From NCBI RefSeq assembly GCF_006345805.1, contig NC_042997.1, positions 46,376,001 through 46,440,000 on the forward strand: a DNA stretch of 64,000 bases, in the 5' to 3' direction. Shown piece after piece: positions 4,796-63,890 of the stretch (its first letter is position 1; each line of letters begins with the position of its first letter). The notes below the pieces were generated by a model. It was not told the origin of the DNA and made no database searches. It saw nothing but the letters and a program-made list of their open reading frames with translations. Source of the DNA: Octopus sinensis (Eukaryota). The position numbers were made by a program, and so were the translations under genes.

Positions 4796-5356
4796 CAGGG
4801 TGTTCAAAAAGTCTCTCCGCAGTGAATGTTTTTCATCCTGCGCATGCGCAACTTGGCTATCATTGCATGGGCGGCCGGGTGTCAGCCATTGTCCCTCAGT
4901 CCGTGTGTACCCTTCAGCGTGTCGACATACTAACCATTGAAGGACGAACGTTTTTAGGTGAATGAGTGTTTCGAGCTGGAAACAAACACACAGATAATGT
5001 GAAACGGAAGTTCAGTGAAACATTTCCAAATACTTTTGTTCCACATCGTGACACTCTGTGCGGGATTTGATAAGAAAATCTAGAAACACAGGCTCGAAAA
5101 CCATTAATGAACTTAAAAAACGCAATCATAACCTTCAAACGGTCCATACCGTGTCGGATTCTCCAAGATGTATTTCAAAACGTGTGTAGAAGTGTCAACT
5201 TATGTATTGAAAATTAAGGACGACACTTTCAAAACCTCTTATAAATTTTTTAAAGTCTTGTAAAGTCTAATCTATTCTTTATTAGTCTTATACCATCTTA
5301 TAAATATTTATTTTGTAATATAATACTTATTGCAGAGAGACTGTTTGAACATCCTG
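4796..5356 (+). mobile_element. Internally deleted Tc1/mariner-superfamily element (rosa/DD41D-like N-terminus)
   Basis: TIRs CAGGGTGTTCAAAAAGTCTCTCCGCAG / CTGCAGAGAGACTGTTTGAACATCCTG-like, with TA flanks. The N-terminal HTH-like segment (LTIEGRTFL..KRKFSETFPNT..PHRDT) is fused to a C-terminal segment (KTINELKNAI). Confidence 0.8.
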
Positions 5357-9488: not shown

Positions 9489-9519
9489 CATACATACACA
9501 CATCCATACATAGCGAATC

Positions 9520-13536: not shown

Positions 13537-14750
13537 CGAGCACGAGAGATATTCATTATACATTTTCTCTGACCCACTTCCGGTTCTTGCAGGAAACAGA
13601 ACTTGTACAGGTATGATTATATATGTCTCTACTTGTTACATTCTAAATTGCAGCTTTCCGCTAAAATACGTTGTCTATTACGGCTGCTGAAGTGCACTAA
13701 GGTGTTATAATGGACGTAGCTTTATATTGATGAGTGAACAGGTTCTTATACTTAAAACGTACACCAAAAGAAACTTTTTGTGAGATGAAAGAAATTTACG
13801 ACTCAGTGAAGCACTGGCATCGCCTGTTTAAATGCGGTCGGACATAGGTGGAAACTGCACCTATTCCTGAACGATTCCGCCATTGATGATGACACCATCC
13901 AAAAATCTGAAGTCTCTTTTTTTGAGTTTCACTGCATGACTATTCGACAACTAGCGCAAGAAGCGACGATCAGTGTACGTTTCCTGGATAAAATCATTCA
14001 CGACTGTTTTCAGATGCTGAAGTTGTCTGCACGATGGATTCCCCGGATGCTCACACCTTTTCAGAAGTAGGAATGTGTCAAGCACTCTCAGACACTTGGC
14101 AATGTGCCAAGAAGACGAGGACTTTTTCCCCAGACTTATTACACGGGATGAAACATGGGTGCATCACAATGATCCTGAGACTAAAGCCCAGTCGAAGCAA
14201 CGGAGAAGTATGATAACTCACCCCCTATAAAGAAGGCCCTCAGCAGGCAAGGTGATGCTCACAGTTTTTTGGGATCAGTGTGGAGTAGTGATGATGGATT
14301 TTCTGGCAAATATAACCGCAATTAATTATGATTCTCTGCTGCAGAATTTACGAGAGGCCATCAAAGAAGAGAGGCGTGGCATGCAGATGAAAGGAATCCG
14401 TTCCCTCCTAGACAAGGCTCCAGCTCACAATGCGCATGTTGCCCAGATGGAAGCATACTCCTGCGGCCATGAAATCCTTCCACATCCTCCTTACTCTCCC
14501 GATCTCGCATCACCTTTTTTCAACCATGAAAACTTTTTTGAAAGGGAAGCACTTTCCGAAGTAAAGTTTTGGCCCCAGACTCAACCTACCCACTTCTACA
14601 GATGAGGTCTTCACAGCTGCAAAAAAAACGATGGGAGAAGTGTGTCACCATTCATGGTAGCTATGTAGAGGGACGAGTAATTATGCCAAGTTTCGCTTAT
14701 TCCAGTCCTTGTGTAGTGGGTCAGAGGAAATCTTTAATGAGTAACACTCG
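13537..14750 (+). mobile_element. Near full-length defective mariner (DD34D) element
   Basis: Motifs LSARWIPRMLT, ITRDETWVHH, VMLTVFWD, LLDKAPAH and LPHPPYSPDLA. TIR cores TTTTCTCTGACCCAC / GTGGGTCAGAGGAAA with TA flanks. Multiple stops and frameshifts. Confidence 0.92.
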
Positions 14751-17579: not shown

Positions 17580-18808
17580 CAGGGATTGGACAAAATAATG
17601 GAGGAAATACCTTAAAATCTCAGACAACTTTATTTTAATATGGGGTAGGTCCACCTTTGGCAGTAATTACAGCTTGAATTCTACAAGGTATGAACTCGTA
17701 CAAGGTTTCAATTGTTTCCAAAGGAATGTTTGTCCTTTCTAAAACAGTCTCCAGTTCTTGTAGTGATGATGCTGGAGGATATCGACTCCTTACTTGTTTT
17801 TTTAAAATGCACCATAAATGTTCAATAATATTGAGATCTGGGGAATGTGGTGGCCAGGTAAGAGCGTCAACTTCCCATTCAGTACCAACTTTAGCTGTGT
17901 GAATTGGTGCATTATCAGCCTGAAAGATTGTGTTTCGCTCCGGAAATAGTCCCGCAAGCATACGTTGAATTTGATCAGATAAAATGCTTAAATAGTATTG
18001 ACTATTAATTATGCCATGAAGGGAAACCATTGGGCCGGCGGATTTCCAAGATATAGCCACCCACCCAGATCATCACAGATCCTCCTCCCTGTTTAACAGA
18101 TGTTAGACGGCAGTCTGGGGCAAATGCTTCTTTTGGCTGTCTCCACACGTATACTCGGCCGATGCTCGGAAATAAGGTAAAAGATGAATCGTCCAAGAAA
18201 ATAACATTCTTCCACTGCTCTAGGGACCAAATCTGTGGGTTTTTACTCCACTCTAAACGCTTTGCAACAATTGTTTTTGAAAGTAGTGGTTTTCTGATTG
18301 CAGCTCCCGGCGAACAGTTTTTATGGAAACTGGGTTCCCGAAGTGGTCTTTAAACTCTGCAGTAATTTTTGGAGCTGTACTTTTTTTATCCTTTCTAACA
18401 ATTCGTATAAGATTCCAACGGTCCCTTTCTAAAAGTTTTTGTTTTCTTCCGGAGTTTTGTTTCGACGAAGATGTTTTTCCCTCTTTCTCAAAAGCTGTCA
18501 TTACTTTCGAGACAGTACTTCTTGATACACCAAACATTTCGGCTGTTTTCGTTGCGCTGGCGCCTGCCATATAAACACTAACAATTTGACCTCTTTGAAA
18601 GTCTGATAGATCTGTCATTTCAATGAATTTTAATTACCTTTTTCTGATGATATCTGAAAAGAAACAGTAATTTTAGCAAAACATATTAAGCAACACTAAT
18701 AATAAATCAAAAAAGCATAAAAATAAAGAAGCTTTTGTTGGTTTTATAGATATTTCAAAATTACGATGCTGTGATGCTAGGTATTTCCATTATTTTTTCC
18801 AACCCCTG
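17580..18808 (-). mobile_element. Full-length defective Tc1 element
   Basis: TIRs CAGGGATTGGACAAAATAATGG / CCATTATTTTTTCCAACCCCTG. Fragments MTDLSDFQRGQIV..FGVSRSTVSKV, DDSSFTLF, GGGSVMIW, FQADNAPIH and WPPHSPDLNIIEHLW; frameshifted. Confidence 0.95.
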
Positions 18809-24311: not shown

Positions 24312-25427
24312 ATGGTCGGCGAACGAACCACAAAAAAAAGGAGTATCAGAATAACAAACTCGGCATCTGAACAACTTTGGACCCCCATAACAACTGAAGA
24401 GGTTACCCAGGCACTGCAAAGACTAAGCAACTGGAAGGCACCTGGGTATGACAAGATCTCCAACTTCTGGTTGAAATATCTAACAGGAATGCACAAAAAG
24501 CTGGCTGAAAACTTTAACAAAGTACTAGCAGAGCCAGAGACAATGCCTGAATGGCTCACGAAGGGGAAAACCATCTTAATTCCCAAATCAAATGAAACAG
24601 AAAAACCAGAAAACTACAGACCAATAACCTGCCTCCCTACTATGTTCAAGGCATTTACTGCAGTGATATCACAAAGGCTGAACAAGCACCTGGACGAAAA
24701 CAAACTGTTCCCAGAAGAGCAGAAAGGATGCCGCAAAGACTCATATGGCTGTAAAGATCAACTAATGATTAATAAAGCCATAACTGAAGACAGCCACAGA
24801 AAGAAGAAAGGCCTCAGTATGGCCTGGATTGAATACAAAAAGGCGTTTGATAGCATCCCCCACACATGGATCCTCGAAACACTAGCCATTAACAAAGTAG
24901 CACCAACAATCATAAAATTCATAGAGCACTCTATGAATAAATGGCAAACAGTCCTACACCTCCAAACAAAAGAGGGACTCATGAAAACCAAAGACATCCC
25001 CATTAGAAGAGGAATATTCCAGGGAGACACGCTCTCTCCACTCCTTTTCTGCTTGGCACTGTCACCTCTATCTGATATGCTAAATAGAACTGGATGCGGA
25101 TATAAATGTTACGGCAAAACGATCAGCCACCTTTTATATATGGATGACCTAAAACTATACGCTGCAAATGACAAACAGCTGGAAACACTATTAAAGACAG
25201 TTCATGGATTTACCAAAGAAATAGATATGAAATTTGGATTAGAAAAATGCGCCAAAGTAACCCTGAAAAGAGGAAAACTAGTTAAGAGTAACAACATCAC
25301 ACTAGATAAAACCAATGAAATAAAAGAATTAGACCAAAGCCAAACTTACAAATACTTAGGAATCCATGAACTAGATAAGACACATCACACACAAATGAAA
25401 GAGAAAATAAAAAAAAGAATATTATAG
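24312..25427 (+). pseudogene. Dong/R4 ORF fragment: reverse transcriptase domain
   Basis: 371-aa open frame with a full RT motif set including YMDD; bounded by frameshifts in A-runs (~24345, ~25420). Confidence 0.92.
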
Positions 25428-25581
25428 ACGAGTTAGATCAATACTAAACACAGAGCTCAATGCTAAAAACAAGATAATAGGTATCAACACTTTAGCTGTC
25501 CCAGTTATAAGTTACAACTACAATATCCTTAACTGGGCACGAAATGAACTGACCAAAATAGATAGGAAAACAAGAAAAATA

Positions 25582-26637
25582 ATGACAGGATCTAGGATGC
25601 ATCACCCAAAATCTGACATAGAAAGACTATATATACAACGTATAGAAGGTGGTAGAGGCCTTATACAGCTGGAAAACTACTATAAAATAACCACCATAGG
25701 ACTGCAAAAATATCTACTTCAGAAGGAAGGAAAACTGATCCAGATAGCGGCAAAACACGAGCAAAACAAAAAACTGTTCTCAGTATTTAAGGAAGCTGAC
25801 AAATACAAACAAGAAATCATACCACCTAATAAACACGAAGAAGAAGAAGAAGAAGAAGATGAAGAAACAACAAAAGCTATAAAACAAATGAAATCCAAAC
25901 TAAAAATAGAACAGCAACGAACCATGATAAAACGATGGCAAGAAAAGCCCCTTCATGGTAAATACTGGACTAAACTAAACGCAAAAGAAATAGTCAAAGA
26001 AAACTCCCAGCAATGGTTGAGAAGCTCAGGACTCAAAGCAGAAACAGAGGGATTTTTAATTGCAGCACAAGACCAAAGCCTCCCCACCAGAAATTACCAA
26101 AAACATGTAATGAAAAGAAACATTACAAGTAACTGCAGAATATGTGGAGATGGACAAGAAACAATAAATCATATTATCTCTAGCTGCCCAGTCTTGGCTA
26201 AGAAGGAATATATTCACAGACATGACAGAGTTGGAACCTACATACATTGGAAGCTATGCCAACATTATGGAATAACAACAGAAAAAAGATGGTATAGGTA
26301 CACACCAGAAAAGGTCACAGAAAACGAGAAAGCAACCATACTCTGGGATATGCCGATACACACAGATAGAGAAATTAAGGCCAACAGACCAGATATAGTT
26401 GTCAGAGATCATGAAGAAAAAAAATGCTTTCTAATTGATGTATCAATACCGGCTGATGACAACGTGTCTCTAAAAGAAATGGAGAAACTCTCAAAATACA
26501 AAGACCTGGAAATAGAGGTAACTAGAATGTGGAATCTGAAAACAGAAACAATTCCTATCGTTGTAGGTGCATTAGGCATGATAAAAATATTCAGACAAAT
26601 ACATAACAAAAACACCAGGACTTACAAACACATATAA
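25582..26637 (+). pseudogene. Dong/R4 ORF fragment: C-terminal zinc finger + restriction-like endonuclease
   Basis: MHHPKSDIERLY..GGRGL, WLRSSGLKAETEGFLIAAQDQSL, CCHC, RHD, PD..D and KYKDL. Confidence 0.92.
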
Positions 26638-30798: not shown

Positions 30799-32518
30799 AC
30801 TTGAAAAGATAGCGAGAAAAGTGGTGGAGAATCAATATTGAAGAATACACAATTAATGGAGAACATAGAGAGTCTATGATAGAACTGAAGCAGAAAATCA
30901 TGAATAAGCTTGCAGTTTTAACACACGCCAATATACATGATAAAGAACCACTTCGTAAGCTCTCAAATACAATCCAAAATAGAAAACAAATTAAAATTGG
31001 AAACTTTGTAACAAAGGAAATTATACAAGAATAAAAACCAAATATTAATGAATTAAATAAAACTATTTATGCTGCTGCTAAGACAATTGAAACGAGTTGT
31101 ATGCCTCTGAAAAGGCAAAGAAATACAAACCTGGGAAGAATTCCAAACTGGGAAAGTGAAAATGAAAAAGAGATTGAATTAATGAGAGGTTAATTATCAA
31201 TATTGAATTAACTAATCTGTGGAAACGATGTAAAGACCAGAAAAGGAAGGAAGATGGAGAGAATACATAGATTCTCACCAAGAGAAGAACTGCTTTCAGC
31301 AAACAAAACAAAGCAACATAAGTCCAAGTAAAATTTCAATGAATATGGTTTTGAGAAGAGAAACACATTTTACAAGCAAAATACGCTGTTCACATCCAAT
31401 GCGAAAACATTCTACAGAGAAATAGGGAATGAAAAAGTAACCACCTCCTTACCATGGGAGAAGTTGAAAACTTCTGAAAAAGTATCTGGAGTGATGGAAA
31501 GACTTACAATGAAAATGTAGACTGGGTTAGACGCAAAGAAGGATCCTACCAAACTTACCAGAACATGCACGGGAAGATATCACAGTAGCAGAACTAAGGA
31601 TGACACACACGAAGGCTCATAAGTGGAAATCCCCTGGTAATGATAGGGTTCCAAATTTCTGATACGCCTTGCTTCCGTGCGACACGAAAAGTTAGTCCAG
31701 TTGTTCAATGAAATTAGAAGAGGTCGTACGAAAACACCTGATTAGTTAGTTATCTACTCCTGAATTATAATGAAACCAAATTTCCCCAAACTATCGGCCC
31801 ATAACATGTCTGTCAACCACGTATAAAATTTCCACTTACATCATCGTGGAGAAAACATACGATATTTTCCCCACTGACCAAAAACGGTGCTGACGAGGCT
31901 CATATGGATGCAAAGACCAACTCTTAATCAATCCCATGATCCTTTAGAAGTGTTATAACAAATGCAGATATCTTAGTTCTGCATGGATTGATTATTAAAA
32001 GGCCTTCGACAGCATACCGCATTCACGGGTCTTGAAATCGCTGGATATCTGCAAAATTTCTCCTGTTTTCAAAATTCCTGAAGCACAACATGTCAAAATG
32101 GAATACGAATCTCCAATTATAACACTGATGGAGTACTAACCATGAAAAATATTAGTATCAACTGCGGCATTTTCTAAGGAGGTTCACTTTCACCTTTAAT
32201 TTTCTGCACAGCCCTTATATCCCTTAGAACTGAACTTAACAGAACAGGGTATGGATATAAAATTGGCGACAAGAAAATAAGTCATCTGTTTTATAGGAAT
32301 GGTTTAAATCGCTATGGCAAAGACGATAATGAGTCTGAAAGACTGCTGCGTACTGTGAGAGTATTCAGTGATGACATCGGTATAGAATTTGGTCTAGATA
32401 AATGTGCTAATGTTACTTTTCAGAAAGGGAAATTGAAGACCTCACATTCATTGGTGTTGGATGTTGACACAAATAACTCGAACAGGATCAAACTTACAAA
32501 TATCTCGGAATAAATGTG

Positions 32519-32680
32519 GGCTCTGGCATTCAACATGCAAGTCTGAAAGTGAAGACCAGGCTCTGGCATTCAACATTCAAGTCTGAAAGTGAAGACCAGG
32601 CTCTGGCATTCAACATGCAAGTCTGGAAGTGAAGACCAGGCTCTGGCATTCAACATGCAAGTCTGAAAGTGAAGACCAGG
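32519..32680 (+). repeat. 40-bp minisatellite x4 inside the Dong relic
   Basis: GGCTCTGGCATTCAACATGCAAGTCTGAAAGTGAAGACCA four times, with only 2 substitutions. Confidence 0.95.
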
Positions 32681-33404
32681 AAAGGCTGGTACAGAAGAGT
32701 TCGAGCAGTCCTAAAATCCGAGTTAAATGCTCGTAACAAGGTGTTAGCTATAAATTCCTTAGCAGTTACGGTGATTATTTACAGTTTCGATGAGTTGAAC
32801 TGGAATATGAGCGAAATAAGGAAGATTGGCAGGAAAATCCGTAAGCTGCTGACCTGCAATAAGATGCACCACCCAAAGGCAGACGCAGGTCATCTTTACC
32901 TTCCCCCAGCACAAGGAGGGCGAGACTTGATCCAATTTGAATTCTACAAATCCACCACTGCTAACAAATGGTACAAGCACCACCCGGAGGCTGTAACTGA
33001 GGGAGAAAATATAACTATTGTTTGGGACTTCCCATTATGTACAAACAGGACCATCAAAGCAAACAAACCGGATATTGTTGTTAAAGACCGAAACAATAAA
33101 ATATATTTATTGATTGACATGAGCATACGCCGGGACCATAATATCTCGACAAATAAATTTGATAAGCTCAGAAAATATACAGATTTGCTAATCGAAATGG
33201 AAAAGATGTGGCATCTTAAGACGGTTACAATACCAGTTATTGTAAGAGCACTGGGAATGATCAGTAAATGAAAATTATTTAAGAATGATCCCTGATTTAC
33301 CATCCATGCAGGAAGTGCAAAAGAGTGTCTTAAAAGGTACATGTTGAGAAGATTGTCGCTGTGAATTTTCTTTTCTTATCCTTCCTTTTATTTTATTTAT
33401 TCTT

Positions 33405-37388: not shown

Positions 37389-37760
37389 CAGAAGCGTTAG
37401 CACGCCGGGCGAAATGTTTAGCGGTATTTCGTCTGCCGTTACGTTCTGAGTTCAAATTCCGCCGAAGTCGACTTTGCCTTTCACCCTTCGGGGTCGTTAA
37501 GTTAAATACCAGTTACGCACTGGGGTCGATGTAATCGACTTAATACCTATGTCTGTCCTTGTTTGTCCGCTCTGTGTTTAGCCCCTTGTGGGTAATAAAG
37601 AAATAGATATTTCGTCCGTCCTTACGTTCTGAGTTCAAATTCTGCCGAGATCAACTTTGCCTTCCATTTCTTTCGGAATCGATAAACTAAAGTATCAGTT
37701 GAGCACTGGGGTCGATGTAATCCATTTCTATGAAATTCCCGGCCATGCGCCAAAATTTGA
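37389..37760 (+). mobile_element. Two tandem SINE family A copies
   Basis: CGTTAGCACGCCGGGCGAAATG..GTTCAAATTCCGCCGAAGTCGACTTTGCC..GGGGTCGATGTAATCGAC, repeated. Confidence 0.85.
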
Positions 37761-59990: not shown

Positions 59991-60060
59991 ATAAAAATGG
60001 TAAGACAACAAAAGAATGAAAGAGACCTCGATATTATGTAAATAGAGGAATTTATCTGTT

Positions 60061-60321
60061 AATGTAATATGTGGCAATTATTCGGTAGTCATGATAAAAC
60101 TCCGAGTTTCAGATGCCGAGGTGGAAAACCACGCCGCAGTCTCTCCAGTTATCCGGCCATCGGAAAAAAGGAAGCTTCTATGCAGTTGCTGGACATGCTA
60201 GAAGTAGCAATTTTTTTTCCGATGGCTGGACAACTAAAGAGATGGCGGCGAGGTTTTCCACCTCGGCATCCGAAACTCGGCGTTTTATCATGGTTGCCGA
60301 ATAATTGTCACATATTACATT
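60061..60321. repeat. Imperfect inverted repeat (~109-bp arms, ~43-nt spacer) of a hammerhead-bearing repeat
   Basis: 60061-60169 pairs with 60213-60321 with about a dozen mismatches. Cores are CTAAAGA (60234, +) and CTGGAGA (60148, -), each followed by GAAACTCGG.GTTTTATC. Confidence 0.88.
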
Positions 60322-60401
60322 TACATATATATACTCTTTTACTCTTTTACTTGTTTCAGCCATTTGACTGCGGCCATGCTGGAGCACCGCCTTTAGTCGA
60401 G

Positions 60402-60443
<42 letters not shown>

Positions 60444-60478
60444 CGCAGGAGTGGCTGTGTGGTAAGTAGCTTGCTAAC

Positions 60479-62699
60479 GGTTGCTTCTGCGCATGTGCGA
60501 GTCAGTGTTGTGTTTGGCACTGAAGCGGTGAAGACGTGCTATTGAAAACTTTGGAAGCCCCATGTAAGGTAAGATTCTGTTTTCTGGGTCCAGTGGGAGT
60601 TTTTGTTGAGAATTGTTTTTTACAGGCAGGAAGTCCTACTGGATTCAGAATTCTGATTCTGCCGACATGTGGCAAATATATTTTTCTCGCTGAGAAAATT
60701 TTTGGGGGCGTATCTGTCCTCGATAAATTGAGTAAATAATTTTCTCACCTAATTGTGAGAATTGTATTGTGCTGTGAAGAACTTTTATGAATTGTGAAAA
60801 CTACTACTTCGCAAGAAAATTATAAAAATAAGCCACTATTGGATTACCTTTCGGACCCATTTTTGTGGAGGTTGTGTTGCAGTTGCGGCGTTCCAGGTTA
60901 AACCCAGGCCGGGAGTACCGCAAGGCCAGAATATTTTTGCTGTGTTTTTTTTCTGTTTATTAACTTTCTTTTGAACTTCATTTAACCCCCCCCCCCCCTT
61001 TTGTTTTTTTTCTTTATTGCGACTTTCCGTTGATTTCCTCCCTTCTGTTGTGCTTTCTCCTTTTTGTTTTTTCAAAAATCTATCAAATTTTATTTGGACT
61101 TTTGAACTTTTTTCTTCCTGCTTTTTGAGTTTAATTTGAATATATTTAAAAAAAAAAACATGGCAATGAAAAATAACAAAATTTTGGAGTGGGAAATCAT
61201 ACCACCTAAAAAGTGGTTAAAAGACCGTGAAGATAGGACGGTGGTGTTGAGAACCTACTCCAAGGCACTTGACACCATCGCCTTATTCGAAAAGACGGCA
61301 ATTGAGGAGGAGTTGGAAGAGTATTTGCCAACAATTAAATTCATTTCCAGGGGTGTCAAATATGCAACGGTGTGGTTGCTATTTGACACCCCTGAAGAGG
61401 CTTGCAAATTTGCTAGCAAACCCTTGGAGGGTAAGGAGATCTTATTCCTGCCCACGTACAAAAAAAAGAAATTGATGAAAGCTTGGATCTGCGGACTGCC
61501 ACCCGACATAGAACCCGACGGGATAGAGGAGACTATCCGCCGGGGTCTGGGTGACAGCGAAACTAAGCTCCTCAATGTAAAAGTTCTTCCTGCGGCTGCT
61601 TGGGTTGGGTCAAAAGCAATTTTGACCCTGTGGGCCCAATCAGCCAATCTGGTTCTTCCAGATTTTTTGAAAATGGCCGGGTGCAGGTACCCGGTGATGC
61701 TTGAGGGTCGCCCCCCTAAGTGTCATCGGTGCTTGGAGTCCGGCCACATAAAGAAGAACTGTCCTCGGGAACAAAATAGGATCCCGGAACAGTTAAGTAA
61801 AACCCCTCTAGAAGAGGGAACGATAACGGCCGAGAAAGCAGAGGACTCCTCAAACAGAGGCCGAAAGAGGAAGGTGAGCAACAATGGGTGCTCACCAAAG
61901 GATAATAGGGATGAGGAGAGGAAGGCGAATCTTCCAGCCACGGAGGAGACGCACCCTCCCTCAGTTGAAAAGGGAAAAAAAAGAAAAAGAGGAAGGAAAA
62001 ACGGGACATTACCGGCTGTCAGTGTAGCACCGGAATGTCCCGGAACTACGTCGGTTGGGGTTGTGCCACCGACAAGAGAAGGAATACCGTTGGCGGGAAC
62101 TGTACCGCCAACGAAAGAACTGAACGTATTGGTCCTCTTCTATAGAGGAGGAGAAATTGAAAAAGTGATGGAAGAGCACTACAAGGGAGCACCTTTAGCC
62201 TTCACACAGGACCCCGAATGGCCTCCGCAGGTAGCTGTGGAGGCCGTGGCGTTCGACGTGACGCTTGGGCTAAAGGAGCTCAATGAAGATTATAACTTGG
62301 TCCCGGGCGACGCGAACTCGGAACTTGATTATGTTCTGAGGGAGGCGTGGTTGATGGTGGAGGGCGCGGGCACAAGCTATTTCGAGGACGATATGTAATA
62401 TTAGTAATGGACTTAAGTCCAAAAATTGAAAAATTGTAAGATGATTAATACCTCGTTCTGTATTAATAATGGACTGCTAAGTCCAAAAATTGGAAAAATT
62501 GTAAGAGGTTTAATACCTCGTTTTGTGTTTATCCTTAAAAAGAGCAATGTTTTAGAGAAGCGAAAGTCGGCGGGCGCTTTTTGTCTTCTCCCATCCTTAT
62601 CATCCTTCTTTCATTATCATTCACCTCATTAATGTCCTCGTCCAGCCCGCAAAGCTAACTTAATCTGTGTACTGCCTTTATGGCAAATGTTTTGAAATA
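60479..62699 (+). mobile_element. ORF1-only Tx1/L1-like retroelement (candidate HAL1-type non-autonomous element)
   Basis: Single intact ORF1-like CDS with ~680-bp 5'UTR and ~300-bp 3'UTR ending TGAAATAAA. TSD AAGTAGCTTG at 60464-60473 and 62700-62709. No EN/RT sequence. Confidence 0.75.
61160..62398 (+). CDS. Intact 412-aa Tx1/L1 ORF1-like nucleic-acid-binding protein (RRM-like + CCHC zinc knuckle)
   Basis: ATG at 61160. KAWICGLPPDI..DFLKMAGCRYPVMLEGRPPK-CHRCLESGHIKKNC (CX2CX4HX4C, 61721-61762); basic RGRKRK and KKRKRGRK clusters; GC-richer than the flanks. Confidence 0.88.
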   Translation: MAMKNNKILEWEIIPPKKWLKDREDRTVVLRTYSKALDTIALFEKTAIEEELEEYLPTIKFISRGVKYATVWLLFDTPEEACKFASKPLEGKEILFLPTYKKKKLMKAWICGLPPDIEPDGIEETIRRGLGDSETKLLNVKVLPAAAWVGSKAILTLWAQSANLVLPDFLKMAGCRYPVMLEGRPPKCHRCLESGHIKKNCPREQNRIPEQLSKTPLEEGTITAEKAEDSSNRGRKRKVSNNGCSPKDNRDEERKANLPATEETHPPSVEKGKKRKRGRKNGTLPAVSVAPECPGTTSVGVVPPTREGIPLAGTVPPTKELNVLVLFYRGGEIEKVMEEHYKGAPLAFTQDPEWPPQVAVEAVAFDVTLGLKELNEDYNLVPGDANSELDYVLREAWLMVEGAGTSYFEDDM

Positions 62700-63890
62700 A
62701 AGTAGCTTGGTTATCAACCATATGGTTCCGGGTTCAGTCCCACTGCGTGGCATCTTGGGCAAGTGTCTTCTGCTATAGCCTCGGGCCGACCAATGCCTTG
62801 TGAGTGGATTTCGTAGACGGAAACTGAAAGAAGCCTATCGTATATATGTATATATATATATATGTATGTGTGTGTATGTTTGTGTGTCTGTGTTTGACAA
62901 CCGATGCTGGTGTTCGGCAAAAGAGACCGATAGAATAAGTACTGGGCTTACAAAGAATAAGTCCCGGGGACGATTTGCTCGACTAAAGGCGGTGCTCCAG
63001 CATGGCCGTAGTCAAATGACTGAAACAAGTAAAAGAGTATATATATGTAAATATATGTATGTATATATATACAAATACACGAATGGACAAATATGTGTGT
63101 TCCTTTATATGTTCACCTCAGTCCATGCTATCAGAATCTTTTTTTAAGTACAAACTCTTTCATATTCCTAACACATTTTCCACACTTTTAAAATTCAACA
63201 AAATTGAATAAACTGCAAAATACTGTGGCCGACTGAATTTACATTTCCTCAATATAATATGGAATGTCAAAGCAATATTTTCGCAGAAACACATCCATAT
63301 TGATTTCTTTGCTCACGTGGGAGTTCACACATGTCCGTTTATACAAGCAGGTTAGATTGTAGATTATTAGATTAACAGATGACAAGCAAAGCTAGAATCG
63401 GCAATAGTCAAACATGTATATATGTATTTATACGCACAGACTCGCCCTGATGCGACCTAATGCTATTGGTGCAGGGACCGTATTTAGTGCTTGTATGGAA
63501 ATAGCGAAACTTTGACAACGTCTTTTAAATTATTCGTTCCTGTATTGCTTATAATTTCCTGCATAAGTAGTATATATTCGGTTGTACTTTCTATACTTAT
63601 ATTTCGAAGTCTATTATTATTGTTGATGTCATGGTCGTTATTGCTTTAGCTGTTGTTTTGATTATGGATAACAAGCAGTTATTCATTACATTACACTAAA
63701 AAAATAAGCGTATAGCTGTAAATGTTCAGATAGGAGGCAAATACTAAGAGAAACGTACAAATGAATCTACAGGGGCCCGAAGGCTTCTGTCTGTTATATC
63801 CATGTAAGATATTCTGAGACATACTTTGAGGAGGCAGTGAACTAGACTTCACAGAATAACTAACACACGCACATACACATGCGTGTATAT

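What the first reader, a model, noticed from the sequence alone, without database searches (positions are those of the whole stretch)
60479..62699. ORF1-only Tx1/L1-like element with an intact protein, inserted into the tRNA-like head of a SINE
Seen: a family B SINE is split in two by a 2.2-kb insert with duplicated AAGTAGCTTG (about 15 bp allowing mismatches). The insert encodes one uninterrupted 412-aa protein (RRM-like region, CCHC knuckle, basic clusters, extra C-terminal globular segment). It ends in TGAAATAAA about 300 bp after the stop, leaving no room for ORF2. It is the only long intact non-microsatellite ORF with its own start and stop in 64 kb of decayed repeats. Established: half-L1 (HAL1) elements carry only ORF1, and Tx1-clade LINEs often target specific multicopy sequences (tRNA, snRNA, other repeats). 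Inference: this is a young non-autonomous retroelement supplying its own RNA chaperone, borrowing an RT in trans and possibly targeting SINE heads.
Basis: partly seen in the sequence, partly recalled or inferred. Interest (0 to 1): 0.82.

Follow-up and report, generated by a model that had tools for sequence, protein, structure and literature searches.

The report
ORF2-less LINE copy inside octopus SINE
A 2.2-kb piece of a LINE retrotransposon that kept only its first gene (an intact RNA-binding protein) sits inside a SINE in an octopus genome; two older relatives elsewhere also lack the reverse-transcriptase gene and also start with the same SINE fragment, so this is a small parasitic family, similar to mammalian half-L1 elements, with an unexplained tie to the SINE.

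Summary
A SINE is split at window 60473/62700 by a 2.2-kb insert flanked by AAGTAGCTTG. The insert carries an intact 412-aa ORF (61160-62398) and has no room for ORF2.

The protein's first ~205 residues are two RRM folds plus a CCHC knuckle. Its distant homologues are ORF1 proteins lying directly upstream of endonuclease/RT ORF2s in octopus and marine LINEs of the L1/Tx1 group. The insert ends with the same 3' signature as those LINEs (GCCYTTRTGG...AATAAA).

A decayed Octopus sinensis copy (L002) has the same 5'UTR, ORF and 3' end and also lacks ORF2, so this is a family and not a one-off deletion. dN/dS between copies is 0.22-0.48.

All three copies begin with SINE bases 1-~36 joined at the same point. 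However, L002 has no SINE remainder after its 3' end, so "targets SINE heads" is only one of two live explanations. The other is a SINE head carried at, or repeatedly added to, the 5' end.

Three claims are unsupported: the "globular" C-terminus, the "tRNA-like" head, and "only long ORF". Tx1 versus L1 placement is unresolved. This is a HAL1-like variant of moderate interest.

The parts
60442..60473 (+). 5' part (head, bases 1-~33) of the split SINE
   Evidence: Matches the first 32-34 nt of six uninterrupted SINE copies. It is 0-1 differences from their consensus.
60464..60473 (+). Upstream copy of the target-site duplication AAGTAGCTTG (possibly extending to 60478 with mismatches)
   Evidence: Exact 10-bp repeat of 62700-62709. 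The following CTAAC matches SINE consensus CTTAC at 4 of 5 positions.
60474..60488 (+). 5' junction segment CTAACGGTTGCTTCT. It contains 10 nt (AACGGTTGCT) absent from the L001 and L002 copies and looks like a partial second copy of SINE bases ~29-38.
   Evidence: Three-way alignment A1, columns 88-100.
60489..61159 (+). 5' UTR (~670 nt) starting TGCGCATGTGCGAG. It has conserved blocks and an A-run just before the ATG.
   Evidence: Aligns to L002 15741-16437 (p-distance 0.29) and to L001 9489-10000 (0.44).
61160..62398 (+). Intact ORF, 412 aa plus TAA: ORF1-type protein
   Evidence: It is 63% identical to P0001 (O. sinensis LOC115225585) and 74% identical at nucleotide level to the L002 pseudogene copy. 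It has 50 distant homologues, several of them ORF1s of complete LINEs.
61187..61717 (+). Two RRM-fold domains (aa ~10-186)
   Evidence: AF2 with a 30-sequence alignment gives pLDDT 85-97. Foldseek against PDB hits tandem RRMs, E ~1e-4, prob 1.0. hhalign to the RBD_ZCCHC3 region of a fish LINE protein gives E 3e-5, prob 72%.
61721..61762 (+). CCHC zinc knuckle (C188, C191, H196, C201)
   Evidence: Invariant or near-invariant columns in the family alignment. Pfam zf-CCHC E 0.0066, below cut-off. 18 of 30 family members hit zf-CCHC.
61856..61999 (+). Linker with two basic clusters (RGRKRK aa 233-238; KGKKRKRGRK aa 271-280), low-confidence/disordered
   Evidence: Translation; pLDDT ~45-55.
62000..62395 (+). 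C-terminal 132 aa specific to this family; origin and fold unknown
   Evidence: Conserved only in L002 (56% aa identity, dN/dS 0.77). No hit in the protein database, to other ORF1 C-termini or to ORF2 in any frame. pLDDT <50.
62399..62699 (+). 3' UTR (301 nt) including a ~62-nt tandem duplication (62399-62467 / 62461-62532, 87.5%)
62674..62701 (+). 3'-terminal LINE signature GCCTTTATGG...AATAAA; end of the insert
   Evidence: The motif GCC[CT]1-3TT[GAT]TGG occurs 9 times in 397 kb, 8 of them at or near LINE-type 3' ends and 7 followed by AATAAA within 12 nt. L002 ends with the related TTGTCTTATGGATATTTGAAT.
62700..62709 (+). Downstream copy of the target-site duplication
62700..63035 (+). Remainder of the split SINE (from SINE base ~24 to its tail)
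   Evidence: 72-80% identical to other copies over 330 nt. The first 177 nt of the rejoined SINE are 6.2% from the consensus.

Best explanation
The insert is a member of a small, old family of ORF2-less derivatives of an octopus L1/Tx1-group LINE. It keeps the LINE's 5'UTR, its ORF1 and its 3' terminus. ORF1 has two RRMs, a CCHC knuckle, basic linkers and a family-specific C-terminal tail. The endonuclease/RT gene is missing.

Inferred mechanism: a Pol II transcript ending at the terminal AATAAA is bound by its own ORF1 protein. An ORF2 protein supplied by a related autonomous LINE then copies it by target-primed reverse transcription, probably recognising the conserved 3' terminus. The window copy inserted into a resident SINE, nicking between SINE bases 23 and 24 and producing a 10-15-bp duplication.

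Every known copy begins with SINE bases 1-~36 fused at the same point to TGCGCATG. The SINE head is either the preferred target or, more likely for the two copies outside the window, a 5' module carried by or repeatedly added to the RNA. Such a module could arise by template switch to SINE RNA or by transcription from a SINE-embedded source copy.

Shown here: anatomy, homology, family membership, absence of ORF2, purifying selection between copies. Inferred: trans-mobilisation, the polymerase, and the reason for the SINE head.
For: ORF1 homology:
- 50 distant homologues cover aa 11-270.
- P0056 lies directly upstream of an Exo_endo_phos+RVT_1 ORF (L004).
- P0008 lies directly upstream of a decayed ORF2 with endonuclease and RT similarity by tblastn (L003).
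- L005 and L006 hold ORF1+ORF2 units in tandem.
- The ORF2 of these relatives is collinear with human L1 ORF2p (E 2e-27).
- Fold: tandem RRMs plus CCHC.

3' end: the same GCCYTTRTGG...AATAAA terminus as those LINEs.

Family, not accident:
- L002 15704-17766 aligns from the SINE head through the 5'UTR and the whole ORF to a related 3' terminus only ~100 nt past its stop.
- L001 carries a third, 3'-truncated copy.
- No ORF2 similarity lies beside the window or L002 copies.

Selection: NG86 dN/dS is 0.22 (window-L001), 0.23 (L001-L002) and 0.48 (window versus the L002 pseudogene).

Insertion: SINE continuity in six intact copies, plus the flanking repeat.

SINE-head link:
- Same junction in 3 of 3 copies, with no homology upstream of the head.
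- The heads differ from each other by 12-21%, against 29-44% for the adjacent 5'UTR. Binomial P = 0.05, 1e-4 and 0.02 for the three pairs.

Precedents: HAL1 (PMC5753468); Tx1-clade target preference for other transposons and recurrent 5' addition of small-RNA heads by template switch (PMC4494074).
Against: - Only three copies could be examined, one of them truncated. No genome-wide census was possible.
- No autonomous partner sharing the 5' or 3' UTR was found. The closest ORF1s of complete LINEs are only 25-33% identical.
- Similarity of the 3'UTRs outside the short terminal motif is not above shuffles.
- There is no evidence of transcription or of recent movement.
- If the TSD is really 15 bp with 3 mismatches, the insertion is old. 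The intact ORF then argues for selection at this locus, meaning a gene rather than a parasite.
- The window copy's SINE remainder and L002's lack of one are not explained by a single simple rule.
Confidence: 0.68

Rival explanations
1. Site-specific homing. The element and its unknown Tx1-like partner insert specifically at bases ~24-38 of this SINE. Each copy is an independent on-target insertion, and the L001 and L002 copies lost the downstream SINE part later or by target deletion at insertion. This is a sub-hypothesis about the SINE link and is compatible with the main explanation.
For: - 3 of 3 copies are joined to the SINE head at the same position, and the unit always starts at the SINE's own first base.
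- The heads are much closer to the SINE consensus and to each other than the adjacent UTRs are, as expected if each came from a different resident SINE.
- The window copy has both SINE halves and a TSD.
- Related octopus LINEs look target-specific. L003 is flanked by (ATT)n on both sides. L005 and L006 are head-to-tail arrays.
- Tx1-clade elements are known to prefer particular transposons, snRNA genes and microsatellites (PMC4494074).
Against: - L002 has its own recognisable 3' terminus followed by (GT)n and non-SINE DNA. No SINE remainder lies downstream on that strand.
- The L001 and L002 heads share A9C and the same TTCC junction, which six ordinary SINE heads lack. A single shared substitution is only weak evidence of common descent.
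- The window junction carries 10 extra bases.
Confidence: 0.3
2. Exapted host gene. The window ORF is a domesticated ORF1-derived gene, like L1TD1 in mammals, kept intact by selection at this locus. L001 and L002 are dead paralogues or retrocopies of it.
For: - dN/dS is 0.22-0.23 over dS 0.75-1.0.
- The ORF is intact inside a SINE that is 6.2% diverged. Survival by chance at that age is ~2%.
- A 15-bp reading of the TSD implies ~10% divergence since insertion.
- It has a family-specific C-terminal extension.
- P0001 is annotated as a gene in O. sinensis.
- L1TD1 is a precedent (PMC4161310).
Against: - Purifying selection between copies is also what active retroelement lineages show.
- No exact or near-identical protein is annotated in any octopus proteome in the database.
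- The other two copies are dead.
- The C-terminal region evolves almost neutrally against L002 (0.77).
- There are no expression data.
- The 10-bp perfect TSD allows a young insertion.
Confidence: 0.15
3. One-off event. This is a single full-length LINE copy that lost ORF2 by a local deletion after insertion, or a processed retrocopy of an ordinary host mRNA.
For: - Only one copy exists in the 64-kb window.
- The 3'UTR contains a local tandem duplication, so the region has been rearranged.
- AATAAA at the end would suit an mRNA.
Against: - L002, a copy diverged by 26%, has the same ORF-stop-to-3'-end layout without ORF2.
- The protein is a LINE ORF1 homologue.
- It has a LINE-type 3' signature.
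- There is no poly(A) tail.
Confidence: 0.05

Closest known systems
HAL1 (half-L1) elements of mammals
   Same: A non-autonomous LINE derivative that encodes only ORF1p and must use ORF2p from an autonomous relative. It arose by loss of ORF2 while keeping both ends, and forms families that persist (PMC5753468, citing Smit 1999 and Bao & Jurka 2010).
   Different: HAL1 derives from mammalian L1. From general knowledge, mammalian L1 has a type II ORF1 (coiled coil-RRM-CTD, Transposase_22) and a poly(A) tail. Here ORF1 is type I (two RRMs + CCHC). The 3' end is a specific motif plus AATAAA with no A-tail. The host is a cephalopod, and every copy carries a SINE head at its 5' end.
Type I ORF1 proteins of L1/Tx1-group and other LINEs (Khazina & Weichenrieder classes; ZCCHC3-like RNA-binding domains)
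   Same: At least one RRM immediately upstream of a CCHC knuckle (definition in PMC4120745 and PMC5203782). The family profile aligns to the RBD_ZCCHC3 region of a fish LINE ORF1-ORF2 protein.
   Different: No Pfam RBD_ZCCHC3 or RRM model hits the protein directly. There is one knuckle only. An extra 132-aa C-terminal tail has no detectable relatives.
Tx1-clade target-specific LINEs and their dependants (Tx1-Mar/SINEU in crocodilians; Keno, Kibi, Koshi)
   Same: These are APE-type LINEs with preferred targets that include other transposons and microsatellites. Their dependent elements repeatedly gain small-RNA-derived heads at their 5' ends by template switch, sometimes with short homology at the junction (PMC4494074).
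   Different: The dependants described there are short non-coding SINEs; here the dependant encodes ORF1. Tx1 membership of the octopus LINEs was not tested. The head is from a SINE, not from an snRNA.
L1TD1 (domesticated L1 ORF1 gene of mammals)
   Same: An ORF1-derived, RNA-binding protein gene without ORF2 (PMC4161310, PMC11925450).
   Different: L1TD1 is a single syntenic host gene with expression data. Here there are several dispersed, mostly dead copies with retroelement ends, and no expression or synteny data.

Membership tests
LINE ORF1p, type I (RRM + CCHC) | At least one RRM fold | tested here: met
   AF2 with alignment gives pLDDT 85-97 for aa 10-205. Foldseek's best PDB hits are tandem-RRM proteins, E ~1e-4.
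LINE ORF1p, type I (RRM + CCHC) | CCHC zinc knuckle immediately downstream of the RRM | tested here: met
   C188-X2-C191-X4-H196-X4-C201 starts 2 residues after the second RRM. These columns are invariant or near-invariant. Pfam zf-CCHC E 0.0066, below the gathering score.
LINE ORF1p, type I (RRM + CCHC) | Homologues occupy the ORF1 position upstream of an EN/RT ORF2 | tested here: met
   L004, L003, L005/L006, L013.
HAL1-like ORF1-only non-autonomous LINE derivative | ORF1 present, ORF2 absent between ORF1 and the element's 3' end | tested here: met
   The window has 301 nt from stop to end. L002 has ~100 nt. No EN/RT similarity is nearby.
HAL1-like ORF1-only non-autonomous LINE derivative | Several copies share both termini, so it amplified in this form | tested here: inconclusive
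   Two copies share the 5' and 3' ends (window, L002). The third is 3'-truncated (L001). A genome-wide census is not possible with these tools.
HAL1-like ORF1-only non-autonomous LINE derivative | 3' end shared with an autonomous partner LINE | tested here: inconclusive
   The terminal motif GCCYTTRTGG...AATAAA is shared with octopus L1/Tx1-group LINEs. The rest of the UTR is not similar above shuffles, and no close partner was found.
HAL1 proper (mammalian L1-derived) | Type II ORF1 (Transposase_22) and poly(A) tail | tested here: not met
   No Transposase_22 hit. The element ends GAAATA/AA with no A-run.
Tx1 clade of non-LTR retrotransposons | RT-domain phylogeny places the element (or its partner) in Tx1 | not testable with these tools
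   The element has no RT. The relatives' ORF2 is closest to human L1 ORF2p among solved structures, but no Tx1 reference set was available. zf-RVT also hits an unrelated LINE in the window just below its curated cut-off (27.3 vs 27.5 bits), so it does not mark the clade.
Tx1 clade of non-LTR retrotransposons | Sequence-specific insertion | tested here: inconclusive
   3 of 3 copies are joined to the SINE head at one position, but only the window copy has the SINE remainder downstream.
Processed retrocopy of a host mRNA | Poly(A) tail, single parental intron-containing gene, no TE-type termini | tested here: not met
   No A-tail, a LINE 3' signature, LINE ORF1 homology. A parental gene could not be searched for.
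tRNA-derived SINE (SINE2), for the host repeat | Head recognisably tRNA-like | tested here: not met
   ARAGORN finds no tRNA in the window. Rfam finds nothing at gathering score and no tRNA hit at E<=10 on a 4%-diverged copy. Box A/B-like motifs are seen only by eye, so a tRNA origin remains possible but is not demonstrated.

The most novel reading that the evidence does not exclude
A long-lived lineage of coding, ORF2-less LINE derivatives is mechanistically coupled to the most abundant octopus SINE. Either it homes into bases ~24-38 of SINE copies with the help of a Tx1-like partner, or it repeatedly captures the SINE's 5' head as its own 5' end. The intact window copy is then either still mobile or has been retained by selection as an ORF1-derived RNA-binding gene.
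Probability: 0.25. Interest if true: 0.62.

Novelty: new variant of a known kind. Interest (0 to 1): 0.45.

Why it matters
ORF1-only LINE derivatives are well documented in mammals (HAL1), where they show that ORF1p alone can sustain a parasitic lineage on another element's reverse transcriptase.

A cephalopod counterpart would show that the strategy is general. This one is built on the other main ORF1 architecture (RRM-RRM-CCHC), has a stringent-type 3' end and carries a SINE head. It would also give a handle on which octopus LINEs are active.

In passing, the work turned up tandem arrays of L1/Tx1-group LINEs. In O. vulgaris these carry an open 1132-aa ORF2 and a 503-aa ORF in the ORF1 position. 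The octopus LINE paper I read reports intact full-length candidates only from RTE and Dong (PMC9115989).

The constant SINE-head junction offers a concrete case for testing how chimeric 5' ends of retroelements arise: by targeting, by co-transcription or by template switching.

Tried and rejected
- Pfam and PDB sequence searches of the protein gave only a sub-threshold zf-CCHC hit.
- Single-sequence AF2 was useless, with pLDDT 34.
- An exact-protein look-up of the window ORF and of the 371-aa RT ORF found no record, so the source assembly and species could not be pinned down.
- The C-terminal 130 aa gave no hit in the word-indexed 5.8-billion protein set.
- The C-terminal region (last ~117-132 aa) showed nothing against family C-termini by phmmer/BLASTP, and no similarity to ORF2 in any frame, which rejects an ORF1-ORF2 fusion by deletion.
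- Whole 3'UTR alignments were not above shuffles: window versus the L003 LINE gave 61/300 shuffles at or above the observed score, and window versus L002 gave 532/1000. Only the short terminal motif is used as evidence.
- A search for a TSD around the L002 copy found nothing convincing.
- An attempt to define an empty site for the L001 copy from the local ZNF-gene duplication failed. Only its 3' break at ~10976 was found.
- I first read the shared substitution (A9C) in the L001 and L002 SINE heads as proof of co-descent. I downgraded it: with 12-15% diverged heads, my rough hand estimate of the chance of one shared change is about 0.2.
- A Pol III transcript from the SINE head is rejected as the source RNA. 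There are 26 T4+ runs on the sense strand, the first at 60580.
- A metagenome scan for the element's DNA gave 0 hits.
- tRNA detection on the SINE gave nothing.
Full report
**What is there.** The window is octopus DNA. Its abundant SINE and every close relative of the ORF come from Octopus sinensis, O. vulgaris or O. bimaculoides.

At 60442 a SINE begins (GGCGCAGGAGTGGCTGTGTGGTAAGTAGCTTG). It breaks off at 60473 and resumes at 62700 with AAGTAGCTTGGTTATCAACCATATGGTTCC.... Six uninterrupted copies of the same SINE in the window and in locus L002 run straight through this point. The 2.2 kb in between is therefore an insertion.

AAGTAGCTTG is repeated exactly on both sides. The next five or six bases are CTAACG upstream and GTTATC downstream, against a consensus of (C/T)TTACC. 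They agree only partly, so the duplication is either 10 bp and perfect or about 15 bp with three mismatches.

The insert has three parts:
- a ~680-nt leader;
- an ORF from ATG 61160 to TAA 62396-62398 (412 aa);
- 301 nt of trailer ending ...GCCTTTATGGCAAATGTTTTGAAATA, with AATAAA at 62696-62701 overlapping the duplication by two bases and no A-tail.

An ORF of this length does not arise by chance. The longest in 100 shuffles is 172 aa, or 313 aa in random sequence of the ORF's own 50% G+C.

It is the longest ORF in the window but not the only long one. A different LINE at 24312-26637 has ORFs of 371 aa (RVT_1, E 2e-31) and 351 aa.

**What the protein is.** Direct Pfam and PDB sequence searches give only a sub-threshold zinc knuckle.

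An exhaustive HMMER search of 1.8 billion representatives finds 50 homologues, all covering residues ~11-270. Those whose source is named come mostly from cephalopods: O. bimaculoides, O. sinensis, O. vulgaris, Argonauta hians. Others come from unnamed Logan, ENA and JGI assemblies, including a marine metagenome.

With a 30-sequence alignment, AlphaFold gives pLDDT 85-97 for residues 10-205 and shows two beta-alpha-beta domains. Foldseek's best PDB matches are tandem-RRM proteins: hnRNP A1 UP1, Hrp1, Sxl, IMP3 RRM12 (E ~1e-4, probability 1.0). C188, C191, H196 and C201 form the knuckle, and these are the most conserved columns of the family.

This is the definition of a type I LINE ORF1 protein: at least one RRM immediately upstream of a CCHC knuckle (PMC4120745, PMC5203782).

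Genomic context confirms it:
- In a marine metagenome contig, the homologue P0056 is followed 10 nt later by an ORF with Exo_endo_phos and the start of RVT_1 (L004).
- In O. sinensis, P0008 is a 615-aa ORF1 followed by a decayed endonuclease/RT ORF2 (L003).
- In O. sinensis L005 and O. vulgaris L006, ORF1+ORF2 units are repeated head to tail every 5.28 kb. In L006 the ORF2 is open for 1132 aa.
- The ORF2 of these elements aligns collinearly, from endonuclease into RT, with human L1 ORF2p (E 2e-27).
- Fish proteins homologous to the L006 ORF2 carry RBD_ZCCHC3_1st/2nd + CCHC in front of EN-RT. The octopus family profile aligns to that region (hhalign E 3e-5, probability 72%).

Whether the clade is Tx1 could not be tested without RT reference sets.

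The last 132 residues are a different matter:
- they have no homologue in the 5.8-billion-protein set;
- they show no similarity to the C-termini of related ORF1s;
- they show no similarity to ORF2 in any frame;
- pLDDT is below 50;
- they evolve almost neutrally against the one other copy that has them (dN/dS 0.77).

'Globular' is not established.

**It is a family without ORF2, not an accident.** Two further copies were recovered through annotated O. sinensis proteins.

L002 (CM016865.1) aligns at 74% nucleotide identity from the start of the leader to the stop codon. It has four in-frame stops and two frameshifts. About 100 nt after its stop it ends in TTGTCTTATGGATATTTGAAT, the counterpart of the window's CTGCCTTTATGGCAAATGTTTTGAAAT, followed by (GT)n. 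It too has no room for ORF2, and no ORF2 similarity lies beside either copy.

L001 (CM016886.1; protein P0001, 63% identical) has the leader and the first 281 codons. It is cut off at ~10976 by a rearrangement.

The window's 3' end carries a signature, GCC[CT]1-3TT[GAT]TGG, followed within a dozen bases by AATAAA. In the 397 kb I hold (both strands) this motif occurs nine times. Eight of these are at or near LINE-type 3' ends: L003, two in L005, two in L006, a truncated copy at window 37581, one in L002, and the insert itself. Seven of the nine are followed by AATAAA within 12 nt.

Beyond that motif the trailers are not alignable above shuffles, and no autonomous element sharing the leader was found. 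Leader, ORF1 and a LINE-type 3' terminus with ORF2 missing is the architecture of mammalian HAL1. HAL1 is a non-autonomous L1 derivative that encodes only ORF1p and arose several times (PMC5753468).

**Selection and age.** Nei-Gojobori dN/dS values are as follows:

| Pair | dN/dS | dS |
|---|---|---|
| window - L001 | 0.22 | 0.98 |
| L001 - L002 | 0.23 | 0.75 |
| window - L002 (pseudogene) | 0.48 | 0.39 |

The protein mattered for the propagation of the lineages that gave rise to these copies, and the family is old.

The window copy itself is bounded in age by its host SINE, which is 6.2% from the SINE consensus. About 5% of substitutions in this ORF would create a stop. At 6% neutral divergence the chance of remaining open is therefore ~2%, and at 2% divergence it is ~29%.

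Two readings follow:
- The insertion is clearly younger than its SINE. This fits a perfect 10-bp duplication.
- The ORF is kept by selection at this locus. This fits a 15-bp duplication with three mismatches.

I cannot decide between them. The first is the simpler.

**The SINE head.** All three copies are preceded by SINE bases 1 to ~36, joined at the same place to TGCGCATG. Upstream of the head the three loci are unrelated:
- window: ...GCTTGCTAACGGTTGCTTC|TGCGCATG
- L002: ...GTTTGCTTCCAC|TGCGCATG
- L001: ...GCTTGCTTCC|TGTGCATG

The link is therefore real. The heads are also much more alike than the adjacent leaders. They differ at 4-7 of 33 positions, where 10-14 would be expected from the 5'UTR distances (up to 18 from synonymous-site distances). 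The binomial P values, using the 5'UTR distance as the expectation, are 0.05, 1e-4 and 0.02. The heads were therefore either acquired separately from contemporary SINEs or conserved.

Two explanations remain.

(a) Targeting. Each copy landed in a SINE at the same site, as Tx1-clade elements do with other transposons, snRNA genes and microsatellites (PMC4494074). The window copy has both SINE halves. The apparent target specificity of the related LINEs also fits: L003 sits between (ATT)n tracts, and L005/L006 form head-to-tail arrays.

(b) A carried or added head. The RNA starts with the SINE head, either because a source copy sits in a SINE and is transcribed from there, or because the reverse transcriptase switches at the element's 5' end onto SINE RNA at a short homology (GCTTGCTT) and copies to its first base. 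Recurrent 5' addition of small-RNA heads of exactly this kind is described for Tx1-dependent SINEU elements (PMC4494074).

L002 favours (b). It has its own 3' terminus and then non-SINE DNA, with no SINE remainder downstream.

The window's extra GGTTGCTTC looks like a remnant of an element-borne head joined to a resident SINE. That would mean both processes operate.

A Pol III transcript from the head cannot be the template. The sense strand has 26 runs of four or more T, the first only 140 nt in.

ARAGORN and Rfam do not recognise the head as a tRNA, so 'tRNA-like' rests only on box A/B-like motifs seen by eye.

| Part of the interpretation | Outcome |
|---|---|
| ORF1-only derivative of an L1/Tx1-group LINE | Supported, and strengthened by a second copy with the same layout and by the shared 3' signature |
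| 'Tx1' | Untested |
| 'Young' | Not settled |
| 'RT borrowed in trans' | Inferred |
| 'Targets SINE heads' | One of two live explanations of a real and constant junction |

The closest known thing is HAL1. This differs in ORF1 type, in its 3' end, in host phylum and in the SINE-head 5' module, so I file it as a new variant of a known kind, of moderate interest.

A genome-wide census of copies and their flanks would settle most open points. I could not run it because no octopus assembly is searchable by DNA here.

Noticed in passing
L006 2623-7456 (O. vulgaris OX597840.1) and L005 (O. sinensis CM016867.1): Head-to-tail tandem arrays (period ~5.28 kb) of complete L1/Tx1-group LINEs. In L006 the ORF in the ORF1 position (503 aa) and ORF2 (1132 aa; Pfam on its homologues shows EN, RT and zf-RVT) are both open. 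The octopus LINE paper I read (PMC9115989) reports intact full-length candidates only from RTE and Dong.
   Followed up: partly
L003 9724-9778 and 15349-15380: The L003 LINE (ORF1 615 aa plus a decayed ORF2) is flanked on both sides by (ATT)n. This suggests a microsatellite-specific insertion of the kind known for Tx1-clade Kibi/Koshi.
   Followed up: partly
window 24312-26637 (+); related fragments at 31540-33286 and in L002 9004-10782: A different LINE with ORFs of 371 aa (RVT_1, E 2e-31) and 351 aa (zf-RVT just under cut-off). By eye the C-terminus has a Cys/His motif and a PD...D/ExK-like stretch, so it may be an R4/Dong-type element with a restriction-like endonuclease. This was not tested.
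   Followed up: partly
window 37581-37604: An isolated 3' end of the L1/Tx1-group LINE (GCCCCTTGTGGGTAATAAAG) with no ORF2 similarity upstream. It is probably a heavily 5'-truncated copy.
   Followed up: partly
window 60050-60332: A large inverted repeat (120-nt arms, 87% complementary, 43-nt loop) immediately upstream of the split SINE. It looks like a MITE or foldback element.
   Followed up: no
window 60316-60406 vs 62973-63063: The tail of another SINE copy lies in reverse orientation just upstream of the (TA)n tract and the split SINE. The split SINE is therefore bracketed by inverted SINE tails (91 nt, 87%).
   Followed up: no
window 62399-62532: A ~62-nt unit in the insert's 3'UTR is duplicated in tandem (87.5% identity). 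L002's 3'UTR is only ~100 nt, so the window's longer trailer is partly a local expansion.
   Followed up: no
window 60489-60502; L002 15741-15754; L001 ~9489-9500: The leader of all three copies starts with TGCGCATGTGCG / TGTGCATGCG, a near-palindrome. From memory it resembles NRF1-type promoter sites. It might mark an internal Pol II promoter.
   Followed up: no
L002 10001-36638 (protein P0002, 'K02A2.6-like'): This annotated O. sinensis gene model is a chimera. Residues 83-128 are the first 46 codons of the decayed element copy, preceded by its translated leader. They are spliced to integrase (rve) exons of an LTR element kilobases away.
   Followed up: yes
L007-L012 (Logan contigs from SRR11869384-94; protein P0007, 30% identical): A sister-family ORF1 (294 aa, 253-1137) is followed by 566 nt with no endonuclease similarity. 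It has a TTCATTTATGG...A10 end at ~1520, so it is possibly another ORF2-less unit. In contrast, the P0004 contig (L013) runs into an ORF2 start. The species is unknown.
   Followed up: partly
L001 3012-4292, 16500-17300, 10976-11195: The L001 copy lies in a cluster of C2H2 zinc-finger genes. Its 3' truncation point coincides with a segment also found downstream of the two ZNF genes (4858-4978 and 17873-18081).
   Followed up: partly
window 17635-18618 (-) and 14252-14605 (+): Tc1/mariner-type transposase remnants (DDE_3, HTH_Tnp_Tc3_2).
   Followed up: partly
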